Assembly: GCF_902713615.1 (NCBI RefSeq)
Contig: NC_052160.1
Coordinates: 35,145,202 to 35,209,201 of the forward strand
Length of the DNA: 64,000 nucleotides
Source: Scyliorhinus canicula
Lineage: Eukaryota
Direction of reading: 5' to 3'
Below are positions 3,029 to 61,310 of this stretch, in pieces; position 1 is the stretch's first letter; each line of letters starts with the position of its first letter. The translations under genes were made by a program, and so were the position numbers. The notes under the pieces were generated by a model that saw only the letters and a list, made by a program, of their open reading frames with translations, searched no databases and was not told the DNA's origin.

Positions 3029-5075
3029 TCCTGGAGGCAGCCTGTTGTTTGGCTGCCTCAGAGATCTTCGTCCAATTAATAACGCCAGGTGGGCTGTGTG
3101 GGCGAGAGGGAAAATCACAGCACCAGAGGCTGCAGAGGCTGGCAGCCCCACCAGAAGAGATGCGTGCTAGTAATGCATGCAGGGTAGCATGAGGGCACGA
3201 CCCTGAGGCCTCAGCTCCCGTGTCATCATTGTGGAGGAGCAACCACTTCAGAGATGGCATCTGGCTGCAGCTGTGACTGTGACCGGTTGATGCCAATGAC
3301 TCTGGGACGGTAGGGGGGTGTCTCTCTGCACCTCCAACTCCCTCCCCTCCCCCCCACCCGCACTTCTTTGCAGGAAGTACCCCTCTCTGGGTTGCAGCCT
3401 TATCAGGCAACTGGCACACTGTGCTCTAGCATGACATTTTCAGCATTTTCACCTCCTAACTCACCAATGGAAGAATCCAGAGCTGTGTCTTTTCTTCAGC
3501 AACTTTGATTGCTGAAGATGATTGCTGGTTAAGCCACCATTGATGCATAGAAATTGAACTTGTCTGTTCTGTTTGGGCCCAATTTGATATCGTAGTCCTG
3601 AAATCAAGTGATGGGCCACAAATTACTATATTTAAAGGTTCCATTTCAGACAGGTTGACAATAAGTCGCTTTATTTAAAATGGTGGAAGTAAAAATGTGG
3701 GAGCAAATCGAGTGTGAGGGATCCAAGGTTGACTTTGGTATCTTCCTTGCTATGCTTGAATAATAGATAAATTAGGGTTGATTTTCTTGCCCGCAATTAG
3801 ATTGAATTTAATAACTAGCAACTAATGGAGCAATTTTATGAATAATTAAGATTTTCATTTATATTCTGCTTCTCTGAAGACATAGGAAGAGCCACTAAAA
3901 CTGTTTAGCATAGGAGTTGAATAATTTCCTCTGTTAATTTTCAACATGGCTGAACATAACTAGTCGTAAGTGGAAAATAGTATCAGGCTTTGTAACTTAC
4001 TCATGTTATGAATTGAAAGAATATTGATTTTTATTTTCAAAACACCAGATGAACTAGACAAAAGCCATCTGAACATGCTCTGACAAAATGACAGTCCCTT
4101 CTAATGTCAGTGAGCTTAAGTGGAATCCTTTGTGACACCCTGTCTCCATCCCATGCTGAAGTCAGCCATTATGTCCATTGCATTATGTCTATCTCCTGAA
4201 AAATCACTGCACGTGTACATATTCAACATTTATGATATGTGACAATTTAGTGTTCGCCGATAAATATTTTGATATAGAAAATCTGTGACAGAAAAGTCAC
4301 TGTTCTCATCTACAAAGTTTACAGCATTTCAGGCAGCAACGCAACACTGTACAGTCGGAAAAAATTGTTACCATAGGTACTGATGATAAATGCATCTTTC
4401 AATCTATTTTATCACCTACCATATGGGAAGCCAAAAATGTTAATTTACAGCAGCTAAAAATGGCCATTAAAAATGGATTGATAGGCACTTTAGCTGAGCT
4501 AATAAACCAAAAATAAATATGTTAAGATGTGCACTGTGCTTAGAAAATTGCACACGATGAAGTTCTGACTTGTAACCTAGTAGTCAATACAATATTGGTT
4601 CCTGGATGGCACTTCAGCAGGCATTAGCCTCAAATATACACCAGTTTCTGTGCTGATTTTGTTGCCAGTAAACTTATGCCAAAACATCCTGTGAATCGCA
4701 TTTGTCTACACTAGACCTTACAAAATAGGGCAAAATGAGAACAAATGCTGTATGCACAAATTGTTGTCATTTACCTTACAACTGCTGATATTAAGTACCT
4801 GATAAGCTATTTCCCCCTCAGAAGAAAATCACCATTACTGCATATTGCTGTTGTTTAGTGGACCTTTTGTTCCAAACACAGGAGGAAATCTGTGCATATG
4901 GAGTGTGAACAGAGCATTCAGATGCTTCACAGCAATAGTGTTGCATTTTTTTCATGGTCTGGTAAGAACCACCAGAACTTGGAAAATGAGGAGAAGGCTG
5001 TGTGATTTGCAGATAAAACTAGTTGCGAGTTGAGATCCTGAACATTTTAGCACCAGGCTCGCTGGACAGAATCTC

Positions 5076-5263
5076 GGCCGGAATTCTCCAGCCGTTGTGA
5101 TTTACTTTTCCCGCCGGCAGCGCAACCCTGCCGGTGGGTATCCCTGTGGCGTGGGGTGGCTTTAATGGTAAATCCCATTGACAAGCAGCGGGATTTGAGA
5201 ATCCCGCCGTCAGCAAATGGCGCGCTGCTGAGAAACACGTGGCTGAGGAAGCAGAGAACCAGC
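5076..5263. mobile_element. Short Harbinger-like MITE (family A)
   Basis: Left TIR GGCCGGAATTCTCC, central palindrome at 5163-5180, degenerate right TIR and possible CTC TSD. Confidence 0.75.
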
Positions 5264-7538: not shown

Positions 7539-8575
7539 GGGCGCGATGCTCCCAAAGAATTTCTAAGTTAATTTGTGGCGAGTTTTTCAGGGGTTTCCCC
7601 GACGCCGGCTCTGCCAGCAAGTTCCTCCCCGCCATTTAATGGCACTTAGTCACTTTTTGGAGCCCTGGGGAGTCTCTCACCGGTTTAGGCTGCACTCAGA
7701 ATTTTATTTTGCCCTGGTGACCTGAACACAGATTGGGGGCCACCATTTTGAAAGGGTGCCCCGAACTCTAAGTAAGATTGAGGGTCCCCCACATACTCCA
7801 CACATGGGCAATGTCACTCCCCCACACACATGGAAACCACCCCACACCCCCAAATGAGGACACCCCACTATGGGGTCCCTGGGGGACCCCCTCTTCATTG
7901 TCCCCAAGCCCCCTTCCACTACCCACTCCCCTCTAAGACCCCCACTCATCACTCACAGAACCTACCGGAGGCCCCTACTTACCTTGCCTGCACGCCCCCA
8001 CCCTTCACACCACCCTCCACCCTAATTTCATGGGCATGGCCCCCTTTGTCCCCTGAAACTTGACAATGCCACCCTTGTACCTGGGCATCCTTGAACTGGA
8101 ATCCTGGCACCAAGGCCGTGCTCCTTTGGGCTTGGCACTGCCACACGGGAACCTTGGCAGTGCCAGGATGGCAGTACCATGTGCCAGCTGGGCAGTGCCA
8201 AGGTGCCCACATTACAGGGGACCACCCTGCACAACCCTGGGGTCTCCGATGGCCGGGGAGACCCCCCAGATGCTGTTCCGCCTGCTCCACCTTTGTGTGG
8301 ATCAGCACTGATCGGCGCCCGGCTGCAGCCTCCCTGGGAAGGCTGGTGAATTGAGGGAGGCCGGTAGATCCTGGGTCAGTAGGTCGTAAGTAGGTTTACG
8401 ACCTACTTCTGGGAGCACCCTTTGGTCACGCCCATTTGGGGCAGAGTTCCGACACTGATCTACCGAGAGAATCTCGAGGGGTGTGGAGGCTGTCAGGAGA
8501 CACGCTGCAAGCCTCTCACGGCATTCCCCGGCCAGATTGTGCTCTCGCCTGAGCGCAACGTGGAGAATCGCACCC
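7539..8575. mobile_element. ~1-kb non-autonomous PIF/Harbinger element (family C)
   Basis: TIRs GGGCGCGATGCTCC / GGAGAATCGCACCC (12/14) and exact TAA TSD at 7536-7538 and 8576-8578. Homologous to 34800-35745. Confidence 0.9.
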
Positions 8576-10380: not shown

Positions 10381-10686
10381 AATAATAATATTTATTATTA
10401 TTGTCACAAGCAGGCTTACATTAACACTGCAATAAAGTTACTGTGAAAATCTCCCAGTCGCCACATTCCGGCGCCTGATCGGGTACACAGAGGGAGAATT
10501 CAGAATGTCCAATTTACCAAACAGCACGTCTTTCAGGACTTGTGGGGGGAAACCGGAGCACCCGGAGGAAACCCACGCAGACACAGGGAGATCGTGCAGA
10601 CTCCGCACAGACAGTGACCCAAGCGAGAATTGAACCTGGAACCCTGGCGCTGTGAGGCAACACTGCTAACCACTGCGCTACTGTGC
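10381..10686 (-). mobile_element. HE1/V-SINE-like SINE (ATT-tail variant)
   Basis: Reverse complement of the 1358-1666 family. Confidence 0.92.
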
Positions 10687-11864
10687 ATCTGAACTGTGCT
10701 TTAAAATGACCACTGAGTTCTCGAACAATTCAGAATGGAGACCAAATGCTGGCCTTGCCAGTGAGCCCCATGTCCCAGGAAAGAAAAAAAAAGTATTTTT
10801 GATATTATTCCCTCCCTCAAGAATAGATGGATTTAAGGATCGATCACAAATCATAGTAAATGACTGCTCTTTAACATTCTAAAACAAAACTTCAAACATT
10901 ATGAATATTGCACTTGTAAATGTGAATCCCTTCATTGGCTGTAAATTTTTGTTTGATGAAGATTCATTCGTTCCGTTTCTTGCATTGTTTAAAATTAAAT
11001 TTGCCTCTAGTTGTGGTTGAATTTTATTTTTGGTGCATTGTGGATTTATATGTGACCACCTCACTTTCACTGTTTATTGTTGGTAGCTGCAATTTCAGTT
11101 AGCATGACTATAATTATGAAGAGGGGCATTCTGATGGGTATATTTATTTGCTGGCTTTTAGGAAAAAAGAGATGATCTGTGAAGACTTGAAACAGGCCCA
11201 TTTACACCTCAGGCAGTACTGCCACAGCCCCACATAACAGCCCAAATGTACAAAAGAAGGCATAACCAATTGGATATCAGGAGAGTTGACTTCAACTGGA
11301 TATTCTGACCCCGCCGCAGCTCTTGCTCATGCTCCCGTGAGACAGCCACAAGCAAGAGCTGAGGAAGGAAACAATAAAGCACACACGGCCACCAGGACGC
11401 AGGATGAATCATCCATTGGAACGGTGAACCAAACCTTTTGATGCATGGATATTTTGGGGATGAAATGTTGCAGTACAGTCCTGACAGGTGAACAAGTTTT
11501 ACCTTACAAAGAAGCATTAGGACCAAGAGGAGGCTTGGATGCAAACTTTGACAAATATTGAGTGCTAATTGTATTGCTAAAGTTAAGTATAAACTTCGGT
11601 ATTAAGTATCTTCAGGACACAAAAAAATGGACTCAGTTGAGTGGATCGTCCGAACCAACTATCTGCCCTTCTGCTGTCATTGGAGAGGGAGCAAGCTGTG
11701 CTCACTGGTATGGTTCTTGGCTTACATGACCAGTGCACATTGCAGAGGCCAGGGTACATCACTACCAGCCAGGAATGAAATTTTGGTTTGATTACATAAG
11801 TTCCCTTTGACATTTTTATTTTTGGTGATTACAGTCCTCCACCAAAGGGGAGTGCCTGCCCCTC

Positions 11865-13719: not shown

Positions 13720-14559
13720 CCTATGAAATAAGGCGAGTTAACAATTCATGTCAAATTTCTCTTACCCAATACTTGCTCAGTTTGCCTTCAGAGAGGCAGG
13801 AGAAGTGCACTTGCAAAAGACGTTGTTTGGTTCAGGTTGCAAAGCTCATAAGCAGATGTAGCGCAATGTGAGTCCAACTTCTGAACTAAGCGTAGAGTTG
13901 AAACAACTAAAAGTACCTGTGGCAGGCATGAGTTGGCAATACACCGAGTATTGGTATGGCATTTCAGTCATTAACTAACCAGTTGAAAATTCATAGAATT
14001 GGCAGCAGAAGCCATGAGAAGGAAGGGGACAACTATTTTATTGATTTTGACCCACCTGAAAACTGTCTGGAGAAAATAAATGGTAAAAGTCTGCAACTGA
14101 AACTGCTTCTGAGAGAAATAGAAAAAGGCAAGCTCCAATCAATAAGACCTTCACCTAAGTGTCTATTCTAACAGTTATGTCCATATATGCCTAATGAAAT
14201 AGATTAGTGCATTATCTCCACCATTGCCCTCTGCTCTAAATCAACTGCTATGAATATCAATTTGCAATGGACACTCATTTTGCAGCTTTATTGAATCCAC
14301 ATGCCGAGTTGACTCTCAAGACAGTTCAAATCAAAACCTATTTTCTTTGTTCCTTATTCTGTGAAATGCATGTGCAATCGGTTAGGATTTTCCAGCCCCG
14401 TGCACCTCGAGACCAGAAACTTCTGCTCGTGGTCTACTGACATTTCAATGGTCTTGCCAAATTGTCCGTCCCACTTGTGATGATTCCCACGGCAGGCGTG
14501 ACTGGATAATTAACCCCTCTGTGTTTTGCCTGTGCCCCTATGCAAGCATATGAATTCTG

Positions 14560-15459: not shown

Positions 15460-15798
15460 GGTAGCATGGTGGTTAGCATAAATGCTTCACAGCTCCAGGG
15501 TCCCAGGTTCGATTCCCGGCTGGGTCACTGTCTGTGTGGAGTCTGCACGTCCTCCCCCTGTGTGCGTGGGTTTCCTCCGGGACCTCCGGTTTCCTCCCAC
15601 AGTCCAAAGATGTGCGGGTTAGGTGGATTGGCCATGCTAAATTGCCCTTAGTGTCCTAAAAAGTAAGGTTAAGGGGGGGTTGTTGGGTTACGGGTATAGG
15701 GTGGATACGTGGGTTTGAGTAGGGTGATCATCGCTCGGCACAACATTGAGGGCCGAAGGGCCTGTTCTGTGCTGTACTGTTCTATGTTCTATGTTCTA
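15460..15798 (+). mobile_element. HE1 SINE (CR1-tail type)
   Basis: B box GGTTCGATTCCC, V-domain, and 3' GGGCCGAAGGGCCTGTTCTGTGCTGTACTGTTCTATGTTCTATG tail. Confidence 0.95.
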
Positions 15799-19977: not shown

Positions 19978-20158
19978 GGCCAGAATTCTCCGGATCACCA
20001 GCCGCATGTTTCTTGGCCACGCGCCTTTCGCCCGCAGCGGGATTCTGTCTTCCTGCCGCTTGTCAATGGGATTTCCCATTGTAAGCACTCCATGCTACCG
20101 CAAAACCCGCTGGCGGGGGTCTGCTGCCGGTGGGAAAACTGAATTGCAATGGCCGGAG
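19978..20158. mobile_element. Family A MITE with its right TIR truncated at the L1 junction
   Basis: Left TIR GGCCAGAATTCTCC and central CAATGGGATTTCCCATTG. Colinear with 41829-42032. Confidence 0.8.
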
Positions 20159-27825: not shown

Positions 27826-28695
27826 ACCCCACCACCACACCAGTATCACAAACACCTCTTCCCCTAAATAATAATAATCTTTATAGTCACAAGCAGGCTT
27901 ACATTAACACTGCAATGGAGATACTGTGAAAAGCCCCTAGTTGCCACACTCCGGCACCTGTTCGGATACACCAAGGGAAAATTCAGAATGTCCAAATTAC
28001 CTAATCGCACGTCTTTCGGGACTTGTGGGAGGAAAACGGAGCACCCGGAGGAAACCCACGCAGACACAGGGAGAATGCCCAGCCTCCACACAGACAGTGA
28101 CCCAAGCCGGGAATCGAACCTGAGACCCTGCGCTGTGAAGCAACAGTGCTAACCACTGTGCTACCATGCTGCTCGCATGGCCATGCCCCATCCCTCTCCC
28201 AGGCATCAGGTCTCTCGCCACACATTAAGTGAACATGGAGGTGGGTTACCCCCTGACAGATCCCCCTTCATGCGCCCCCATGGCATTTCCCCCTTGGCAC
28301 TGCCTCCTGGCAGTGGCACTGCAATGGTGCCAGGTGGCAATGCCCAGTCTTGTCCTTTAGCCCCAGGATCTCCAGGAATATCTGCACCGCCGACATGTTC
28401 ACCAGAACTGGTTTTCACTTTTGAAAACCAGTAGTGATTGATGCCGTCATGATGTCTGGGCGCTGGTCGGGAGGATAGGTTGTGGGCGAAGGCACAGCCC
28501 TTTGAACAGTTAAGTTCATAGAAACCAGGTTCACGCCCCTTCTCGGTGTGAACCTGATCACGTCACTGGTAGGGGGGATGGGAAAGATCACAAACTGAGA
28601 TATCACCGGCGCAAATCCACTTTTGGGCGCTCGTAAGATTTAGCGACCATAATGTGATTTGCACCTGTGGCGAATGGGACCGCCAAATCTCACCC
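27447..28695. mobile_element. Harbinger-like non-autonomous element containing a SINE and a long poly-C tract
   Basis: Termini GGCTAATTTCCCC / CCAAATCTCACCC, flanks ACA/ATA, and a GGCAnTGCC array at ~28290-28350. Confidence 0.6.
27866..28172 (-). mobile_element. HE1/V-SINE-like SINE (ATT-tail variant)
   Basis: Closely similar to 10381-10686. Confidence 0.93.
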
Positions 28696-32761: not shown

Positions 32762-32948
32762 TGGTGAATTCTCTGCTGGCGGGAATCTCCGTTTTGCTCG
32801 CAGCACACTCCCACCCTGGGGTTTCCCTGCGGCATGGGGTGGCCACAATGGGAAATCCCATTGGCCAGCGTTGGGTGCTGAGAATCCCACTGCTGGAGAC
32901 GGCGCACTGCAGAGGAAATCGCGGCTGGGGAGGCGGAAAATCCACCCC
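32762..32948. mobile_element. Family A MITE
   Basis: TGGTGAATTCTC / GAAAATCCACCCC termini, AAT on both flanks and central CAATGGGAAATCCCATTG. Confidence 0.82.
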
Positions 32949-32977
32949 AATTTTACTATCCTTTATGTCAAGAACAT

Positions 32978-33291
32978 GGGGCGGCACAGTGGCGCAACAG
33001 TTAGCACTGCTGCCTCACAGCGCCAGGGACCCAGGTTCAATTCCCACCTTGGGTGACTGCTTGTGAGGAGTTTGCACATTCTCCCGTGTCTGCGTGGGTT
33101 TCCTCAGGGTGCTCCGGTTTCCTCCCACAGTCCAAAGATATGCAGGTTAGGTGAAGTGGCCATGATCAATGCACAGGATTATGGGATAGGCATGGGAGTG
33201 GGTCCAGGTAGAGTGCTCTTTTGGAGGGTCGGTGCAGACTGGATTGGCCGAATGGCCTCCTTCTGCACTGTAGAACTGCTGTGGATTCTAT
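32978..33291 (+). mobile_element. HE1 SINE (CR1-tail type)
   Basis: GGGGCGGCACAGTGGCGCAACAGTTAGC head, V-domain and GGCCGAATGGCCTCCTTCTGCACTGTA tail. Confidence 0.93.
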
Positions 33292-33562: not shown

Positions 33563-34144
33563 TAATTTAGCCCCGAAGATACCAATCATATTTTCCATAT
33601 TTTGTCCAAATCATCAGAATTCCTAAACAGCATATATAACTGACGATGTAAAAATATTGCCATCAATTTGGAATGATCTCACGCTAAATTCTAAAACAGC
33701 TGAACTTGCTTCAGTGCATTGCCTAGTAGCTCCAAATCTTTTGGTTGTTTATGCAGATCAATGGGAAACCATAAATTAAAGACGCAAATGTCATCCTAAA
33801 TTGGATGAGTGGTGACTCACTATTTTCCACATTATCCTCTCTGTCCCACCTCCTTCCTACTCTGTTTGCGAAAGCCTGCCAGTGTCATGTCTTAGTAAAT
33901 TCGTTGTGTAGGTGAGCAGGTTGTGTATAATGAGCAACAGCTATAGATTGCTTGCAGCACAGAAAGAGACCATTTGGCCCATTAAGTCTGTACCATCTTT
34001 CTGCAAGAGCTACACAGCTCGTCCCATACCCCTACCCCATCCCTATGACCGTGCATTTTTTCTCTTCAGATAATTGTCTAGTTCCCTTAAATGAGAACAA
34101 CCTTTTACCCACTTTGTTGAAGATCAGAAAATAACAACGATAAT

Positions 34145-35773
34145 GGGGCGATTTTTCAGCCGTGCTGCACCCAGTGCAAATTGCGCTGTCTGGAAAATAC
34201 TTAGTGAGCCCTGAAACGGGATTTGCGCCAGGCGCCATACAGTTTGTGATGTTTCTGGGCACTCCCAGCAAAGGTACCCTGGTTTACTCCCTCATTGGGC
34301 ATGAACCAGATTATTTAAATCCTCATTTCAATTCGCAGGGCCTGTTTTTGAGCAGGATTCTCCTGGCTTCTGCAATTCTCCCCCAGGATGAAGCGGGCGT
34401 GAATCACTACTGGTCTCCATTGGAGTCCTGGTGTGGCCAGGGTGGCACTGCCAGGTTGGTACTGCGAGGGTGCCAATGGGCAGCGCCAATGAGTGGGCCT
34501 GAAGGGGTTGGTGCCTGAAGGGACATGAGGGAAGGGCATGGGGGAGGGAAGTTGGCAATTCCAGTGGGGTGTTGCTCACCTGGAAAGTGGGGCACAGTTA
34601 CTGGTGATCGGGTAGGGTCTGTCTCGTTACTCTGAGGAGTCGAATCTGCGGCCATGTTTAGGCCCCACCCCTCTCAATGCTACTGCAAAACGCTTCCCCC
34701 AAAAAAGAAGACGATATGAGAGAAGATCGCAATGAGTATTGTGCCGGAACAATCGGAGTGACGCACATCAATTATTTGATGTGCGTTAAATTACACTCAA
34801 GGCGTGATTATCCCAAAATATTTCTAATTTAATTTGTGGTGGGTTTTTCAGGGAGCTTCCCACTGCTATTCAATGACACTTAGTCACTGTTTTGGGCCCT
34901 GGGGAGTTTTTCACCGGTTTAGCTCACAGTTAGAATGCGTTTTAGCACTGGGGAGCCACCATTTTGAAAGGGTGCCATGATCTCTCAGTGAGCTTGTGGG
35001 TTCTCCACACCCCCACCCATTGGCAATGTCACTCCACACACACATGGATACTATCCCACACCCCACTATGGGATCCCTGGGCGTCCCCTCTCTTCAGGCC
35101 CACCCAAGCCCCCTTACAGCACCCCCTCCCTTCTAGGGCCCCACCCATCACCCACCCAACCTCCCAGAGGCTCCTACTTACCTGCCCTTCAAATCCCCTC
35201 CCGCCACCCTCATCTCATGGGCATGCCCACCCCCTCCTCCGGCCCTTTGCAGTGCCACCCCAGCACTCAGGCACCCTTGCACTGCCACTCTGGCACCCAG
35301 GCAGTGCTCCTGTCAGGGTGTCAGTGCCAAGTTACCAGCTGGGTAGTGCCAAGGCCTGCATTCCAGGGGGAGGGCCAGTGAGCTAACCTGCACTTACCCT
35401 GACAACCCTATGGCTCCCTGGCCCAGGACGACCCCGCGGGTGCCGTTTTGCATGGTCCACAGTTGTTTGGATAGGCGCCCGGGTGCAGCCTCCCTGGGGA
35501 GGCTATAGAATCGAGGGAGGCTGTGGATCCCGTGCAGGTAGGTATTAAGTAGGTTTAGGAGCTACTTCCGTGAGCATCATTCGGTCCTGCCCAGTTGGGG
35601 TGGGGTTCCGACTCAGACTCTCACGGGACGTCAGTGAATCCCGAGAGGCATGGATTCTGTCAGGAGGCTGCTGCAATCCTCTGCTGGCATTCTCCGGCCA
35701 TGTTGCGCTCAAGCAAGAGCACAAAGCAGCCAGAGACTCGCACCCTTAGTCACTTCTTGGGGAAATTCCGCCC
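34145..35773. mobile_element. Harbinger-like non-autonomous element hosting a nested family C copy
   Basis: AAT on both flanks (34142-34144, 35774-35776). Termini GGGGCGATTTTTC / GGGAAATTCCGCCC. Confidence 0.75.
34800..35745. mobile_element. Family C Harbinger MITE (nested)
   Basis: Colinear with 7539-8575 from end to end. Flanks TCA/TTA. Confidence 0.85.
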
Positions 35774-37049
35774 AATATAAAGATCAGGGTCTAAATTCTC
35801 CGCCACGAGACGCCGCAAACGTGAACAGGGATCGAGCGGAGAATTGAACATCCCACCAAAAGCAAGGTCCCCGTCCGGTGCCGAATCGGGCGCCATGCTC
35901 CACTCCCTATCTGGTGCCGATAACGAGGTTTGCACCCCACACCGGCGGTGGCATCTAAAACCGGCATTTGCATTCATTTAAATGTGAAAAAAGCGCGATT
36001 GACCCACTCTGATGTCCGCCTCCGCAACCCACTCTGCTCTGCGTCTCCTCTCAAGCGGAAGTCATACGTGCAAATTCACCACAGGTATTTACAAGCGGGG
36101 ACTGGGCACCATGGCTGTTGAGGGGATGAGAGAAGGTAAGCAAAGTTTGAAAAACTTAGAAATTGTAACGCTTGCTGGGGGTAGCTGCCAGGACCGGGGT
36201 GAGTAACCGGGAGTGACTTGGAGAGAGCTCCACAGATTCGGGGTGGCCAGGCTCAGGCTCCCATTGCTGCAGTGGTTGTTTTGAACGCACCCATTTGGTT
36301 CAAGGTCCAGGCCCCTGGCTGCTCACTCAGCTGACTGCTCACGATGTCCTGTAAACACTTAGGGAGTCTCTGGTTATTTAGGAGCCCACCCAGTCCACCC
36401 TTCTGGAAACCCCCAGGCTCCAGATTAATCATTAACTGGATGGATGTGCACAAGCTCAATCAGTGGAATACCAGGTACTGCCACTCAGTGCACTTATAGG
36501 AAATGCTGCCCCACTGCAGGGCAAGCAGGGGGATAGCAGAGCCCACCCCAAACAAAGAACACATGCACCGTTGCCTTTGGTACATTCCCTGGCACACTGC
36601 TCCACTCAGGGCACAGGCCTCACTAGCAACAGTATCAGCGAGCCCACTCCGCAGGATCACCAGCTGACTCCAAGCCCTGTCTGCCCACTATGCCCCTACT
36701 CCCATCCATCCTACCACAGCCTGTGTGTCACACCCAGGACCCACATCACCCTGCAGTTACACTCCCAGCAGACCCACACTCCCATGCCTTGCCCCCATCT
36801 GTAGGACCTGCCCACACACAAGCCTCTAAGCATGGAGGTGAGTCACATAGGGGGGGTCTATAGTTAGTAGCATGTGTGTGCAAGGCACCTGGCCATGGAG
36901 GGCAATACAGGTATTGGGACGTGGTGCAGGGTGGGATGTGAGGGGGATACAGGCAGGTGGGTTTTGATTACCCTCCAAGGGAGTGGGGATGTGAGGAACG
37001 AGGGACAGGAGTGATTGCAGGGGAACAGAGATGGTGACGAACCCAAGCC

Positions 37050-37290
37050 GCCCTACGGTGGTCAATCATCTTCTTCCTGCACTGCGTGCCGGTCCGCCTG
37101 GTGATGCTGGCAGCACTGACTGTCTCGGCCACCCCGCCCAGGCCCAGTGGACGGTGGCGGGTTGGAGCCTCCTGCCCCCCCCCCCTCCCCCCCCCCCTGT
37201 GGAAGAGAGGGTCCCACCTCTCCCCCACTGCATCCCATATTTGAGCAAGATCAGTCTCAGTGAACCTCGGGTCAAGACTCCTTGGAGCTA
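37050..37290 (-). pseudogene. Harbinger Myb/SANT-like exon remnant
   Basis: VAETVSAASITRRTGTQCRKKMIDHRRAA matches the W..VA..V....RT..QCRKK..DL pattern of Myb/SANT-like domains. Confidence 0.8.
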
Positions 37291-37655
37291 TCTTCTTGGC
37301 TGGAATGAGAGTGAGTGGGGAGTGGAGTGCTTATAAACAGCTGCAGCTTGTCGAGATCTCCAGCACCAATTCCGGCCCCAGTGAATCCGATGCCAGCGGG
37401 AATGAGAATTGCTCTAGATTCACGTGGGCAGAGTGCTGGCCCATGAGCATGTCCTGAATTTCTCCACAAATAGCACCCCCAACGGAAACACAAGCCCCAA
37501 TTCAATGCCAGTGTCAACACTTAGAGCGCGGTTTTACTGCCCCGCAACACACTAAAGTCAGCTCGCAGTGATGCAGCCAGTGGCGTGCAGAGGGGGGGGC
37601 CGACGGTGCATTGGCCCCGGGCATCCATTGGATGGGGGCATCCAATCAGAGAAGG

Positions 37656-37927
37656 GAAAAAAAAATATATTAAAAAAAAAATTTAAAAAAAAAAAAAAAA
37701 TTTTTTTTTTTAAATTTAGATTACCCAATTATTTTTTTCAATTAAGGGGCAATTTAGCGTGGCCAATTCACCTACTCTGCACATTTTTTGGGTTGTGGGG
37801 GCGAAACCAACGCAGACACGGGGAGAATGTGCAAACTCCACACGGACATTGACCCAGAGCCGGGATCGAACCTGGGACCTCAGTTCCGTGAGGCGGTTGT
37901 GCTAACCACAAGGCCACCGTGCTGCCC
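37656..37927 (-). mobile_element. Short A/T-tailed V-SINE variant inserted in the hAT 5' region
   Basis: V-SINE head and core plus tail AATTGCCCCTTAATTG...GGGTAATCTAAATTTAAAA. CAGAGAAGG is duplicated at 37647-37655 and 37928-37936. Confidence 0.9.
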
Positions 37928-38558
37928 CAGAGAAGGAAATAAGATAGTAATTTTAAAATTTCAGCGGTGATAAATCAATTTTTGGAGGCTCACCACACTG
38001 CAGAGGCAGTTGTTAGCCCTTTATTCCTTTAACATGGTGTACCCTTTCTGTCTAGAGAAAATGGTCCTTCTCCCCATCCCCCCCACACGCATGCGCATGA
38101 TGTACGTGGTGCAACCATCAAAAGCAACAAGCAGACGTGGCTGTTCGTTCCTGCGTTTCCTCGAGTCATAACTCGTCTTTTCTTCAGCTTTTTGTGCATC
38201 TAGATTAGTTCTTTTACCTACTCAGGTCAGTGAATAGCTCTAGAACAGGTGCAACTACAGTTTTTATAGGTTTTTTGGCGCTATTTAATGAAATATTTAC
38301 GTGGGATGTAGTAAGAGTGAAGCCTGGATGATCAGAGGACTGCTATGGCATTTAATCTCGGAATAGGAGACATTTATTCCTTAACATGCTAATATTCGAA
38401 TACAGATACCACTAATTTGCAAGTCTATGATATAAATTGCACAAAATTATCAGTGGAGAATCAGTGTGAAATAATTTGATACGAAGGAACAAAGAAATGA
38501 AATATGGTTTATCCGTCTGCAACTGACCGATTGTTTACCATTTTCTTCCCATTTTCTC

Positions 38559-41118
38559 ATGCGTCTTACGGTTTTTGAGATAGAAAATGAAATGTTACGA
38601 GTATTTCGTGTACAACCGAGTGGAGCACAGAACAGGAAAAAAAAGAGGGCCAGAGTCGAAGAAGAGTCCCATCAAAGAGGGGCATTAGATGCATGGATAA
38701 AAAGAAGTAAAGAAGAAGTAGGAGAACCTGGAGAAGTAAAAGATGATGTGGGTGCAGAGAAGGATTTTTCTGATACGGATTCAGCTCGGTCAGAACATAA
38801 TACTCTCTCTCCTCAGTCTCGTTGTCAGGATGATGATCCATGTGAAGAAAATAAAGAAGATATTTGCATATTTTTGCAAAGAAGCGATTTTGGCTGTTTG
38901 AAGAAACCGATTCCAGATCATTTGAAGATGACAATATTACAACATGGCCCTGAAAGATATCAGAATAAAAGTGGTCCATTTGCTGAGAAGGATGGGAGAT
39001 CATTTTCCAAACAGTGGTTTGATAAAGTTTCCACAAACGGAGAAATTGTGGAGAGAAAATGGTTGTTATACTCTCCATATCGGAAAGCATGCTACTGTTT
39101 TGTTTGCTTTTTGTTTTCAAAGGAGCATTTGTTGTCTGTGTCAAACTTTGGAAAGGAAGACGGTTTCTCCACTTGGAGAAAATTAAATCCAACAATACCT
39201 GACCATGAGAAAAGCCCTTCTCATAGAGCTCACATGAGGGAATACCTGAACCTTGTAGTTCGACTCCATCATTCAACTACGATAGATGCTGAACTTCAAC
39301 AGCAAATGTCTGCTGAAAAGAAAAGATGGAAAGCTATAACTGAACGGATTGTCGAGGTTATATCCTTTCTGGCAAAACAGAATCTGGCCTATCGTGGACA
39401 TCGAGGAGAAGGAATATCTGGGTTATCAGAGCCAGGGGAGACAGTCAGTGAAAATACAGGAAACTTTCTAGCAACAATCAGACTTTTGGCCAAATATGAT
39501 GACATCTTAGCAAAACACTTGCAAAGAGGGAAAGAGAAACCAAAAAGTGTCACCTACTTGTCCAACAGAATTCAAAACGAAATAATCAATCTTCTTGGTG
39601 AAACTGTCAAGAAAAATATAATTTCCGAAATTAAGGACGCAAATTATTTTAGCATAATGCTGGATTCAACTCCAGATATTGCCCATGAAGATCAGGTTTC
39701 TGAAATTCTGCGTTACGTTCATATTGATGAAAACAGAAAAGTAGAAATAAAGGAGACATTTCTGGGATTTTTTCAAGTCAACAAGAAAGATGCAGTCAGC
39801 CTGGTAAATAAAATTCAGGAAAAATTGGAAGAAGACAAAATTTCCATGAATGACTGTCGTGGTCAAGCATATGATAACGCAGCAGTTATGGCTGGAGTGA
39901 GAGGAGGTGTTCAACAAAAAATTCTTGAAGTTAACCCAAAAGCTGTGCTTGTGAACTGCGAGAACCACAGCCTCAATTTGTCCTGTGTCCATGCAAGCGA
40001 GGTGCAACCTGTTGTTGTTACATTTTTTGGCATTCTAGAAAAACTCTACTTTTTTTTCTTCATCTACTTCTCGTTGGGAAGTGTTAAAATAATTTGTCAC
40101 TCGGACTGTGAAATTGACAGTGTGACACAAGATGGAGTTCCAGCCATGATGCTGTGCAAGTAATCCACAAAGAGTGTGACAACGTTATTGCAAGCCTTCA
40201 ACACCTGCTGGAAGGAGAATTTTCAAGGAAAACTAAATCTGATGCAGGATCGCTACTGAACTCTATTCAACAGTTCCCGTTTATAGCTTTATTAAATTTT
40301 TGGTACTCAGTTTTATCATCAGTGGATAAAGTCTCAAAACGTTTGCAGGATCCGAAAATGGGGTTCCATGAAGCTTCTTGTGATCTGAGAGGACTTATTC
40401 ATATCTTGAATTTGAAGAATGACGAAATTATCCACAATGCAATAGATTTAGCCAATGAATATTGTCAAAATTGGGGAATACCAATTGCACGAACAAGGAG
40501 AAGAAGAATAATGCCTGGAGAGTCAGCAAGAGATAGTGGACTGACGGCAGAAGAAGAAATGAATAGAGTAATGGTAGAGATTGTGAACAGATTAAAACTG
40601 AAATTGAAGACCGCAGTGTCCGTCTTCAAAGACTCAGTGACCGATTTTCTTTTCTTCTGAACTTGAATTCAGGAGTGATTGAAGATGAACAAGAAAGAGA
40701 GAAATTAAAAAAGGAATGTTCAGACTTTGCAAATTATTATGACAATGATGTGGTTGCAATTCAGTTATATGACAAAATTATTGATTTTGTGATGCTCCTT
40801 CGAGCTGGAGGGAATAGAGTTCCCCCTGATCCTAAAGATGCTCTGGAGTCTTTACTGCAGTATGGGAGGGATGTCTTTCCGACGCTGTGTGTTTCATACA
40901 GATTACTGCTTACAATCGCATTTTCAGTCGCAAGCTGTGAAAGGTCATTTTCAAAACTGAAATTAATAAAAACATATCTGAGGTCTTCTATGTCACAGGA
41001 GCGACTGACCAACCTGGCTTTAATAAGCATTGAAAAAGAATTTCTCACAGCTGATGTAAAAAGTGAAGTAGTTCAGGTGTTTTGTGACAGGAGGTATCAT
41101 TTGGGGAAAAGAACTTAA
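38559..41118 (+). pseudogene. hAT transposase (TTF-type Zn finger, DUF4371-like region, DDE core, C-terminal dimerisation domain), disrupted
   Basis: PSGAQNRKKKR, WLLYS..ACYCFVC..HEKSPSH, YFSIMLDSTPD, GQAYDNAA, CENHSLNL, CDTRWSS (shifted frame) and SVASCERSFSKLKLIKTYLRSSMSQERL. Frameshifts at ~40050, ~40114 and ~40595, and a TAA at ~40090. AATAAA at 41117 and 41147. Confidence 0.95.
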
Positions 41119-41828
41119 TAAATTTGATTGATTTATATTAAAATCGAATAAAGTGTTTATTTCATGTTTCATCTGTGTTTATATATTCAAAATGTTTTCC
41201 TTTCTCATAATATTTCTCAGTATATTAGGTCTTATACTTGAGTCTTTGGGGCATACAATCAAGATTTGCCCCGGGCATCACCAGACCTCTGCACGCCACT
41301 GGATGCAGCATGGCCAATAGAAGTTGGGAGACCCCGTTCCCGAGATCTACCTGGCTAGGAACAACTCACAAGATCTAAACGCGATCTCGCCATTCAGTAC
41401 TGGTCTCCACAAACGAGGACCAGATGGCAAGGCACACGTAGGTGATCGGAGGCCCCCAGGTGCATGCCCTTTGGTCAGGGTGCTACCCTGACACTGCTGG
41501 TACCACGCTGGAAGTGCCAGCCTGGCACGCAAGCAGTGCCACCTGGATGCCAGCCACAAGGTGCCCAGGTGGCATTGCCAGTTGGCAGGGGTACTGCCAA
41601 GTTGGCACTGCCAAGCAGTTTCTTGGCAGTGCAAGCACCGGGAAACAGGCGGCTACAGTTGCTCACTATGGGACCTTGTTAACATTTTGTTAAATCGTGC
41701 CCTTATGTCTCCCAAATGGAGAATTTCGCCTCAGGCGTGTTCATTTTACTTTTCGTTAAAAATATGTACCAAATGTACCCAATATGCCAGCTGCCAATCT
41801 AGAATTAGGGGTTATTGTTTAAAATTAA

Positions 41829-42032
41829 GGGGAGGGATTTTCTGGTGCACCAGCCGCATGTTTCTTGGCGGCGCACCATTTACTGATGGTGGAATTCTCT
41901 ACTCCCGCCGTTGTCAGTGTGATTTCCCATTGTAATCGCCTCATGCCACTGGGAAACCCATGGGCGAGGGTGGGGGGGTGGGGAGCTGTGCCGGCGGGAA
42001 AAGGGAATTGCAACAACCAGAAAATTCCGGCC
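41829..42032. mobile_element. Family A MITE
   Basis: GGGAGGGATTTTCT / AGAAAATTCCGGCC termini. Colinear with the 19978 copy. Confidence 0.82.
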
Positions 42033-51871: not shown

Positions 51872-52100
51872 CTTTTTAAAATAAATTTAAAGTACCCAAT
51901 TATTTTTTTGTTTCCAATTCAGGGGCAATTTAGTGTGGCCAATCCATGTCACCTGCACATCTTTGGGTTGTGGGGGTGAAACCCACGCAGACATGGGGAG
52001 AATGTGCAAACTCCACACGGACAGTGACCCAGGGCCGGGTTTCAAACCCGGGTCCTCAGCGCCGCAGTCCTAGTGCTATCCACTACGCCACATGCCACCC
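51872..52100 (-). mobile_element. Short A/T-tailed V-SINE variant with a 12-bp TSD
   Basis: Same family as 37656-37927. AAAAGGAGAAAC occurs at 51860-51871 and 52102-52113. Confidence 0.92.
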
Positions 52101-54160: not shown

Positions 54161-54378
54161 GGCCGCAATTCTCTGGCCGTTCACTGATGGTGCGATTCTC
54201 TGGTCTCGGCGGCAGTGCACTCCCACCCACAGGTTTGCCGATGGCATTGTGTGGCTTCAATGGGAAATGCCATTGAAAAGCGGCGGGGCAGAGAATCCCG
54301 CCGCCAGTGAACAGTGTGCCAAATTCTCCATACTCGCCAGCAGAGTAGCGGGTGAATTTGAAACGGAGAATCCTGGCT
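54161..54378. mobile_element. Family A MITE inserted in CR1
   Basis: GGCCGCAATTCTCT / GGAGAATCCTGGCT termini and central CAATGGGAAATGCCATTG. Confidence 0.82.
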
Positions 54379-55525: not shown

Positions 55526-55878
55526 GAGCAGCACGGTTGCACAGTGGTTAGCACAGTTGCTTCACAGCTCCAGGGTCCCAGGTTCAATTCCCAGCTTGGG
55601 TCGCTGTCTGTGCGGAGTCTACACGTTCTCCTGTGTCTGCGTGGGTTTCCTCCGGATGCTCCGGTTTCCTCCCACAGTTCAAAGATGCGCAGGTTAGATG
55701 TCTGGCCACACTAAATTGCCCATAGTATCCAAAAAGGATAAGTGGGGGCTACTGGGTTACGGGGATAGGGTAGAGATGTGGGCTCGAGTAGGATGCTCTT
55801 TGTAAGGGCCGGTGCAGACTCGATGGGCCGAATGGCCTCCTTCTGCACTGTAAATTCGATGATTCTACGATTCTATGA
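55526..55878 (+). mobile_element. HE1 SINE (CR1-tail type)
   Basis: Full head, V-domain and GGGCCGAATGGCCTCCTTCTGCACTGTAAATTCGATGATTCTACGATTCTATG tail. Confidence 0.95.
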
Positions 55879-60576: not shown

Positions 60577-61310
60577 GGGCGGGATTCTCCGACCCCCCGC
60601 TGGGTCGGAGAATCGGCGGGGGTCGGCGTCAATCCCGTCCCTGCCGGCCGGCGAATTCTCCAGCCCTCCAAAAGTCGGCGAGGCGTGAGTCGCGCCGCCC
60701 GCCCCGGAGAATGGCGGGAACCGGCGTGACTCAATGGGCCCCGGGGCTGCCCGAAGTCTCTGGCCCACGATGGGTAGAAGTTCCGCTGGTTTTTTGCCGG
60801 TCCCGCCGGTGTGGATCAGACTAGGTCCCTTACCGGCGGGACCTGGTGGCGTGGGCGGGCTCCGGTGTCCTGGGGGGGGGGGGGCGCGGGGCGATCTGGC
60901 CCTGGGGGGTGCCCCCACGGTAGCCTGGCCCGTGATCAGGACCCACCAATCGGCGGGCGGGCCTGTGCCGTGGGGCACTCTTTTACTATGCGTCAGCCGT
61001 GTCAGCCTCCGCAATGGCCGACGCGTAGGTGACCCCCGCCCTGCGCATGCGCGGGGATGACGTCAGCAGCCACTGACGCACCCACGCATGCGCAGACTCT
61101 CACCGGCCGGCGGGGTTCCTTTGGCCCCGGCTGGCGTGGTGTCAAAGGCCTTCCACGCCGGCCGGCAGGGCACAAACCACTCTGTCGCCGGCCTAGCCCC
61201 TGAAGGTGCGGAGGATTCCACTCCTTTCGGGTGGGCCAATGCCGCAGTGGTTCACGCCACTCCGTCCCGCCGGGACCCCCCGCCCCGCTGGGTATGGGAG
61301 AATCCCGCCC
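60577..61310. mobile_element. Young CpG-rich Harbinger-like MITE (734 bp)
   Basis: Perfect 14-bp TIR GGGCGGGATTCTCC and exact AAT TSD. Removing it restores CR1 SGVPQGSILGPQLF. Confidence 0.95.

What the first reader, a model, noticed from the sequence alone, without database searches (positions are those of the whole stretch)
34145..41731. Two MITEs inserted at the equivalent ACAC|TTA site 25-26 bp inside their host elements' right ends
Seen: the 34800-35745 element sits at TTACAC-TTA-GTCACTT, 25 bp from its host's terminus (35773). The 37524-41702 element sits at CAACAC-TTA-TGTCTCC, 26 bp from its host's terminus (41731). Hosts and guests belong to different subfamilies, and the same CACTTAGTCAC motif is also carried inside family C (~7643, ~34878). 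Inference: these Harbingers carry their own preferred target site, producing self-targeting, nest-building transposition (a safe-haven strategy). This is the best candidate for an undescribed system here, but it rests on only two events.
Basis: partly seen in the sequence, partly recalled or inferred. Interest (0 to 1): 0.8.

Follow-up and report, generated by a model that had tools for sequence, protein, structure and literature searches.

The report
Harbinger MITEs nested in Harbinger ends
Two old transposon fragments sit at the same spot, about 25 bases inside one end of two other related transposons; this most likely reflects the known sequence-specific target choice of this transposon superfamily rather than a new system, but only two events can be seen here.

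Summary
A family C MITE (34800-35745) and a 447-bp MITE later hit by a hAT (37524-41702) each lie at ACAC|TTA, 25 and 26 bp inside the right terminus of two other Harbinger-type elements (34145-35773 and 35788-41731). Contigs from two individuals and a sister taxon span the junctions, so this is not an assembly artefact.

New here:
- The two host ends are homologous.
- Host 1's end is also homologous to family C's own left end.
- That end type carries TAA at positions 26-28 from the terminus. It is occupied in both hosts and empty in both family C copies.
- All three TWA-duplicating insertions in the window follow (A)A-S-AC. This resembles the published Harbinger3_DR target AAACAC-CWG-GTCTTT.

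Best reading: ordinary extended target specificity of PIF/Harbinger transposases meets a target-like motif inherited in the ends of this clade. Elements therefore land in each other. An adaptive "safe haven" is not shown.

Given the first event, the chance of the second landing at the equivalent site is about 1/26. No genome-wide test was possible with these tools. Four unchecked first-reader notes on other pieces of this genome report the same pattern. Extended Harbinger targets and MITE self-insertion are already published, so I rate this a new variant of a known kind.

The parts
34145..35773 (.). Host 1, a non-autonomous Harbinger-type (PHIS) element of 680 bp without its guest, flanked by AAT/AAT (34142-34144, 35774-35776)
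   Evidence: the two 45-bp ends are similar (1/1000 shuffles reach the score). The body is low to moderate copy in read contigs.
34797..34799 (.). Left copy of guest 1's target duplication; it reads TCA and was presumably TTA
   Evidence: The right copy at 35746-35748 reads TTA.
34800..35745 (+). Guest 1, a family C MITE
   Evidence: 68% identical to the free copy at 7539-8575, which has a TAA/TAA duplication.
35749..35773 (.). 25-bp tail of host 1 (its right TIR) cut off by guest 1
35788..41731 (-). Host 2, a Myb-only Harbinger derivative of 1.76 kb without its guest. Duplication is CAG/CAG (35785-87, 41732-34); TCA/TCA is also possible.
   Evidence: ends are similar (0/1000 shuffles reach the score). 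Body is high copy.
36971..37330 (-). Fossil Myb/SANT-like gene of host 2
   Evidence: 45% identical to P0080, E 1e-7. P0080 carries PF13873. The fossil itself gives no Pfam hit.
37521..37523 (.). Left TTA of guest 2's target duplication; the right copy is at 41703-41705
37524..41702 (.). Guest 2, a 447-bp TWA-type MITE (37524-37577 plus 41310-41702) carrying a later hAT insertion
41706..41731 (.). 26-bp tail of host 2 (25-27 bp depending on the boundary call)
7539..8575 (+). Free-standing family C copy; duplication TAA/TAA, left flank AAAGAC
7564..7566 (+). Unoccupied TAA at positions 26-28 of family C's left end, homologous to the occupied host 1 site
   Evidence: H1_R against C1_L, 0/1000 shuffles reach the score. 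The same holds at 34825-34827 in guest 1.
7643..7653 (+). Internal CACTTAGTCAC motif of family C (second copy at 34877-34887), part of a roughly 28-bp module homologous to host 1's right end; unoccupied
37549..37559 (+). ACAC-TAA-A-GTC motif 29 bp inside guest 2's own left end; unoccupied

Best explanation
Two independent, ancient, fixed nested insertions of TWA-duplicating PIF/Harbinger MITEs landed in a homologous subterminal module, ACAC|TTA|(N)GTC, 25-26 bp inside one terminus of two older Harbinger-type elements.

Inferred mechanism: the mobilising DDE transposase, with its Myb-like partner, reads an extended, roughly palindromic target centred on the 3 bp that it duplicates, as shown for other members of the superfamily. 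This clade of elements inherits a target-like sequence, with a TWA at positions 26-28, in one of its ends. Resident copies therefore supply a large share of the good landing sites, and elements pile into each other.

Shown: the anatomy, the homology of the sites, the shared flank, and the presence of the nested structure in other individuals.

Inferred: that the flank is recognised by the transposase.

On this reading, nest-building is a by-product of target specificity.
For: - Exact junctions and duplications.
- Free family C copy with TAA/TAA.
- Host right ends are homologous, with the TTA aligned: 4/500 shuffles; 5/1000.
- Host 1's right end is homologous to family C's left end, with TAA at 26-28 in both: (0/1000).
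- Left flanks of the three TWA-type insertions are AAAGAC, TTACAC and CAACAC. The published Harbinger3_DR target is AAACACCWGGTCTTT (PMC3016246).
- With the guests removed, only 4 sites in the window fit [AC]CAC-TWA-N0-1-GTC. Two are the host ends and both were hit.
- 2 of the 3 TWA-type insertions in a window with 2355 TWA sites lie in these ends.
- Junction-spanning contigs come from other samples.
Against: - There are only two events.
- The motif was defined from them, so the count is partly circular.
- The right half-site is weak and is shifted by 1 nt in host 2.
- The two internal CACTTAGTCAC copies, the guest 2 motif and two other matching sites (5389, 5821) are empty.
- No target logo could be built.
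- No genome-wide map could be obtained.
- No transposase gene is present in the window.
Confidence: 0.55

Rival explanations
1. Coincidence. Insertions choose any TTA/TAA, and two of them happen to lie at equivalent positions.
For: There are only two events. The probability of the second event given the first is about 1/26, which is not extreme. Host ends are more AT-rich than the GC-rich bodies, so TWA sites cluster near the ends.
Against: The sites are homologous nucleotides with an identical ACAC-TTA. A third insertion shares the A-S-AC flank. 2 of 3 insertions fall in about 50 bp of a 64-kb window with 2355 TWA sites. The superfamily is known to read 9-15 bp (PMC2836001).
Confidence: 0.2
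2. Terminus-tethered targeting. Transposase or Myb-like protein bound to the resident element's TIR captures the incoming element and directs integration a fixed distance (about 25 bp) inward. Proximity to an end matters, not just the local motif.
For: Both hit sites are 25-26 bp from a TIR, and guest and host TIRs are similar (GGGCG..ATT..CC). Copies of the motif that are not next to a live-looking terminus (7643, 34877) are empty, as are end-proximal TAAs lacking ACAC (7564, 34825).
Against: The counts are 2/2 against 0/4, which is far too few. The free family C copy at 7539 is not in any recognisable element end yet has the AAAGAC flank. No such tethering is described for this superfamily in the papers read.
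Confidence: 0.1
3. One reading: an evolved landing pad. The elements maintain their own preferred target so that new copies land harmlessly in old ones (a safe-haven strategy).
For: The TWA at 26-28 is conserved in three lineages of ends. The motif is exact in two family C copies that are only 68% identical overall. Other first-reader notes on this genome report the same pattern but are unchecked.
Against: Conservation between copies of one family reflects descent, not selection. A perfect 12-mer in a 1-kb alignment at 68% identity is expected a few times by chance. The motif may instead be a protein-binding part of the end. Hosts and guests make different duplications, so the benefit would go to another lineage.
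Confidence: 0.1
4. One ancestral nested composite that later multiplied, or mis-drawn host boundaries, so there are not two independent events.
For: Duplications would be copied along with a composite. Host 2's boundary is ambiguous by 2 nt.
Against: Guest 1 and guest 2 share no full-length homology. The hosts share only their end modules. Both hosts have matching duplications and significant terminal inverted similarity.
Confidence: 0.05

Closest known systems
Harbinger3_DR of zebrafish (NuwaI group, CWG duplication), with its palindromic 15-bp target AAACACCWGGTCTTT
   Same: Vertebrate Harbinger, 3-bp duplication, and flanks A-A-S-AC before the triplet and GTC after it (host 1 site ACAC-TTA-GTC). 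Two-protein system with a Myb-like partner (fossil present in host 2).
   Different: The central triplet here is TWA, not CWG. The match is 8/12 flank bases at host 1 and less at host 2. Specificity here is inferred from three sites and has not been assayed.
Maize PIF/mPIF and rice mPing: 9-bp extended target around TTA/TAA
   Same: TWA duplication, Tourist-like MITEs, and preference extending beyond the duplicated triplet (PMC2836001).
   Different: Those are plant elements. From memory, the PIF target is the palindrome CWCTTAGWG, which the host 1 site matches in 8 of 9 bases; I could not verify this motif in the held papers.
Self-inserting rice MITE families (Castaway, Gaijin) and MITE multimers (Jiang and Wessler 2001, as summarised in PMC5172404)
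   Same: Tourist-like MITEs found nested in MITEs far more often than expected, and attributed to insertion preference.
   Different: I could not read the original paper, so I do not know whether a fixed position near an end was reported. Here the site is a conserved subterminal position, and host and guest differ in duplication type.
PHIS superfamily groups with other 3-bp duplications (Pangu ANT, NuwaI CWG, NuwaII C|TNA|G; PMC4482050)
   Same: The hosts make AAT (host 1, and the element at 60577-61310) and CAG or TCA (host 2), with GG/AG-starting TIRs.
   Different: No transposase is available to place them. The two hosts have homologous ends yet different triplets, which fits none of the groups cleanly.

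Membership tests
PIF/Harbinger (TWA group) non-autonomous elements / Tourist-like MITEs (the guests) | 3-bp target duplication TTA or TAA | tested here: met
   Guest 2 TTA/TTA, free family C copy TAA/TAA, guest 1 TCA/TTA (5 of 6 bases).
PIF/Harbinger (TWA group) non-autonomous elements / Tourist-like MITEs (the guests) | Terminal inverted repeats of about 14-25 bp | tested here: met
   GGGCGCGATGCTCC against GGGTGCGATTCTCC (12/14); GAGCGCGGTTTTAC against GGGCACGATTTAAC.
PIF/Harbinger (TWA group) non-autonomous elements / Tourist-like MITEs (the guests) | Mobilised by a PIF-type DDE transposase plus a Myb-like protein | not testable with these tools
   There is no transposase gene in the window, and the guests are non-coding.
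PIF/Harbinger (TWA group) non-autonomous elements / Tourist-like MITEs (the guests) | Extended target preference beyond the duplicated triplet | tested here: inconclusive
   Three sites share A-S-AC upstream. This is too few for a logo.
Harbinger-type two-gene elements (host 2) | Myb/SANT-like second ORF | tested here: met
   The fossil at 36971-37330 (minus strand) is 45% identical to P0080 (E 1e-7), and P0080 carries PF13873. The fossil itself is below Pfam detection.
NuwaI / Harbinger3_DR-like (host 2) | CWG duplication | tested here: inconclusive
   CAG/CAG fits and gives gap-free TIRs (11/14), but TCA/TCA and AGG/AGG also fit because TCAGG flanks both ends.
Pangu group (host 1) | ANT duplication, TIR starting GG or AG | tested here: met
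   AAT/AAT and GGGG.../GGGC.... The transposase-based criteria are not testable.
Self-inserting MITE families (rice Castaway/Gaijin type) | Genome-wide excess of insertions into members of the same or related families | not testable with these tools
   Only a 64-kb window was available. The read-laying output was truncated, and no other copies could be fetched.

The most novel reading that the evidence does not exclude
Integration needs both the ACAC-TWA motif and a nearby Harbinger terminus. Transposition proteins sitting on a resident element's TIR would recruit the incoming element and place it about 25 bp inward. This would be a homing mechanism that makes Harbinger ends dedicated landing pads and drives stack-building in this genome.
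Probability: 0.12. Interest if true: 0.7.

Novelty: new variant of a known kind. Interest (0 to 1): 0.4.

Why it matters
If the position-26 site proves to be a genome-wide hot spot, it would be a clear vertebrate case of DNA transposons whose ends serve as preferred targets for relatives. That would help explain how nested transposon stacks form in large, repeat-rich genomes. It would also provide a natural data set for reading the extended target code of PIF/Harbinger transposases, which is of some interest for site-directed integration tools. As it stands, the finding is a well-documented pair of events consistent with known behaviour of the superfamily.

Tried and rejected
1. Laying contigs of four public runs on 34100-37700 at 80% likeness. 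This confirmed the junctions and gave copy-number contrasts. However, only 15 of about 500 joints and 24 of about 5200 loose ends were listed, so no map of interruption points could be made. No joint skipping guest 1 was listed, which proves nothing.

2. Harvesting other copies through pseudo-ORFs.
- The host 2 Myb fossil and the ORF next to the site gave no hits.
- The hAT ORF gave only other species plus one 5.2-kb metagenome contig without Harbinger ends.
- The exhaustive search found three Myb-like relatives, but they lie on chromosome-scale records whose DNA the tool does not serve.

3. Exact-pattern scans for conserved family C stretches in metagenome, prokaryote-genome and viral collections all returned 0 hits.

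4. A strict in-window scan for TWA plus TIR pairs found only the free family C copy and one probable chance pair at 14204/19734.

5. Single-end scans found no further ends of these types.

6. The orientation of guest 2 relative to family C could not be settled, because the shared central region is itself repeat-rich. No orientation claim is made.

7. The idea that one composite multiplied was rejected for lack of guest-to-guest homology.

8. The original PIF, Harbinger3_DR and Jiang and Wessler papers are not held. Their content is cited through PMC2836001, PMC3016246 and PMC5172404.

Full report
**What is there**

The stretch 34145-41731 is a stack of DNA transposon remains in a vertebrate-like, repeat-rich genome with 44% G+C.

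- **Guest 1 (34800-35745)** has Harbinger-like TIRs. It is 68% identical over about 1.05 kb to a free-standing copy at 7539-8575, which is flanked by a perfect TAA/TAA duplication.
- **Guest 1's flanks** read ACAC-TCA on the left and TTA-GTCACTT on the right.
- **Host 1's tail.** Downstream of guest 1 lie exactly 25 bp ending in a TIR-like GGGGAAATTCCGCCC, followed by AAT. The same AAT precedes GGGGCGATTTTTC at 34145. Host 1 (34145-35773) is therefore a 680-bp element with an AAT/AAT duplication.
- **Guest 2 (37524-41702)** has a perfect TTA/TTA duplication and matching TIRs. Inside it sits a hAT element (37578-41301) with TIR CAGTGGCGTGCAGAGG, an 8-bp duplication GATGCAGC and transposase ORFs. 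The original guest was therefore a 447-bp MITE.
- **Host 2** runs from 35788 to 41731 if its duplication is CAG/CAG. TCAGG occurs on both sides, so TCA or AGG are also possible. The tail beyond guest 2 is 26 bp, or 25-27 bp with the alternatives.
- **Host 2's coding remnant.** It carries a decayed Myb/SANT-like gene on the minus strand (36971-37330). The fossil has no Pfam hit. It is 45% identical (E 1e-7) to a protein that carries PF13873.

**Is it real?**

Contigs assembled from public runs span the critical junctions:
- host 1 into guest 1: X2 record 18, 34561-34829;
- guest 1 through the host 1 tail into host 2: X1 record 2, X2 record 20 and X9 record 26. X1 record 2 and X9 record 26 have no differences.

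These come from two samples of the species and from a second labelled organism. The nesting is therefore not an assembly artefact, and it is shared among individuals.

**Are the two sites equivalent?**

Yes. Host 1 and host 2 have no body similarity, but their right ends align significantly, and the two TTAs fall in the same column:
- ...ACAC TTA -GTC... for host 1;
- ...ACAC TTA TGTC... for host 2.

Only 4 of 500 and 5 of 1000 shuffles reach the observed scores. This accounts for 25 against 26 bp.

**New observations**

- Read inward from the terminus, host 1's right end is clearly homologous to family C's own left end (0 of 1000 shuffles).
- Both have TAA at positions 26-28, followed by GT(G)TAATTT. 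In the two family C copies this TAA is unoccupied (7564-7566 and 34825-34827).
- The internal CACTTAGTCAC of family C (7643 and 34877, exact) lies in a roughly 28-bp module that is also homologous to host 1's right end.
- Guest 2 carries ACAC-TAA-A-GTC 29 bp inside its left end.

A subterminal TWA about 25 bp inside one end is therefore an inherited feature of this group of elements.

**More than chance?**

- Host 2 without its guest has 26 TWA sites in 1762 bp. Only one lies within about 200 bp of the right end. Host 1 has 13 TWA sites.
- If insertions chose TWA sites at random within hosts, the second event would hit the equivalent site with probability about 1/26.
- More broadly, the window has 2355 TWA sites and three recognisable TWA-type insertions. 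Two of these sit in the two host ends.
- With the guests removed, only four sites in the window fit [AC]CAC-TWA-N0-1-GTC, against about 0.8 expected. Two of the four are the host ends. This last count is partly circular, because the pattern was read off the two sites.
- The evidence is suggestive, not conclusive.

**What explains it?**

PIF/Harbinger elements are known to read more than the duplicated triplet.
[quoted passage not shown] The three TWA-type insertions here have left flanks AAAGAC, TTACAC and CAACAC. AAAGAC is the exact reverse complement of GTCTTT. Host 1's site also has GTC on the right. In other words, the flanks follow the same A-A-S-AC / GTS pattern around a different central triplet.

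The simplest reading is that ordinary extended target specificity meets a target-like motif carried in the ends of resident relatives. High-copy carriers would then dominate the pool of good sites; host 2's body is represented by thousands of contigs. Nesting would follow without any special strategy. The recognition step is inferred, because no transposase is present in the window.

**Rivals**

- *Pure coincidence* remains possible (about 0.2).
- *Tethered targeting* is a more novel possibility: proteins bound to the resident TIR would place the incoming element a fixed distance inward. The tiny tally fits this. Motif plus terminus is 2 of 2 occupied. Motif alone is 0 of 2. Terminus-proximal TAA without ACAC is 0 of 2. 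These numbers cannot carry weight.
Identity of a 12-mer between two copies of one family reflects descent.
- *A single ancestral composite* is rejected, because the guests lack homology to each other.

**Comparison with what is known**

- Extended targets in this superfamily are established.
- Groups within it with ANT, CWG and TNA duplications are described (PMC4482050). This accommodates the hosts' AAT and CAG.
- In the papers I could read, I did not find a conserved built-in site at a fixed subterminal position that relatives hit. I therefore rate this a new variant of a known kind.
- Four first-reader notes on other pieces of this genome describe the same pattern. They are unchecked and count only as leads.

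**Limits**

I could not obtain other genomic copies.
- The read-laying output was truncated.
- Pseudo-ORF searches found nothing.
One is GCA_902713615.2, which I recall, from memory only, to be a catshark assembly.
- Pattern scans of the public collections were empty.

The decisive test, a genome-wide histogram of nested-insertion breakpoints along the host consensus, remains to be done.

Noticed in passing
37578-41301; L001:274-4335: The hAT inside guest 2 has a 97.7% identical copy at a different locus on an ENA metagenome contig. Contigs of organism C give depth 0 over 37609-37700, while organisms A and B give thousands. This fits a recent arrival. Its nearest protein relatives are scattered across arthropods, tunicates and molluscs.
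   Followed up: partly
35774-35787: Host 1 and host 2 were inserted only 8-11 bp apart. Each duplication is preceded by GAT (CGAT|AAT and AGAT|CAG). This hints at a separate flank preference for the host-type lineage, as another first-reader note (s1-216922) suggests.
   Followed up: partly
7539-7682: The first 140 bp or so of family C look like a mini-element. They consist of the left end plus an inward-facing module resembling a right end (TIR-like GGGGAGTCTCTCACC about 30 bp after the internal TTA). This suggests family C was built on a small palindromic MITE.
   Followed up: partly
60577-61310: Another element has near-perfect TIRs (GGGCGGGATTCTCC) and an AAT/AAT duplication, but no TWA near position 26 in either end. 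The built-in site is therefore specific to one end type, not general.
   Followed up: partly
37285-37527: One 276-nt contig from organism C, about 82% alike, aligns across the host 2/guest 2 junction by 4 bases (record 12). It could be the diverged orthologue, or a paralogous host copy with a similar guest at the same site.
   Followed up: no
34764-34790: An almost perfect hairpin (ACGCACATCAA / TTGATGTGCGT) with TTA in its loop lies 10 bp upstream of the guest 1 site. That TTA was not used.
   Followed up: no
1350-1665, 10381-10698, 15460-15729, 27866-28169, 32981-33272, 37711-37925, 51882-52091, 55528-55852: A SINE-like family of about 300 bp, 74-89% identical between copies, has one copy inside the hAT. 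This makes the stack four levels deep.
   Followed up: no
5075-5258, 19986-20158, 32800-32954, 41820-42013, 54191-54320: A further MITE family has GGCCGGAATTCTCC-like TIRs and unclear duplications. One copy lies about 90 bp downstream of host 2's right end.
   Followed up: no
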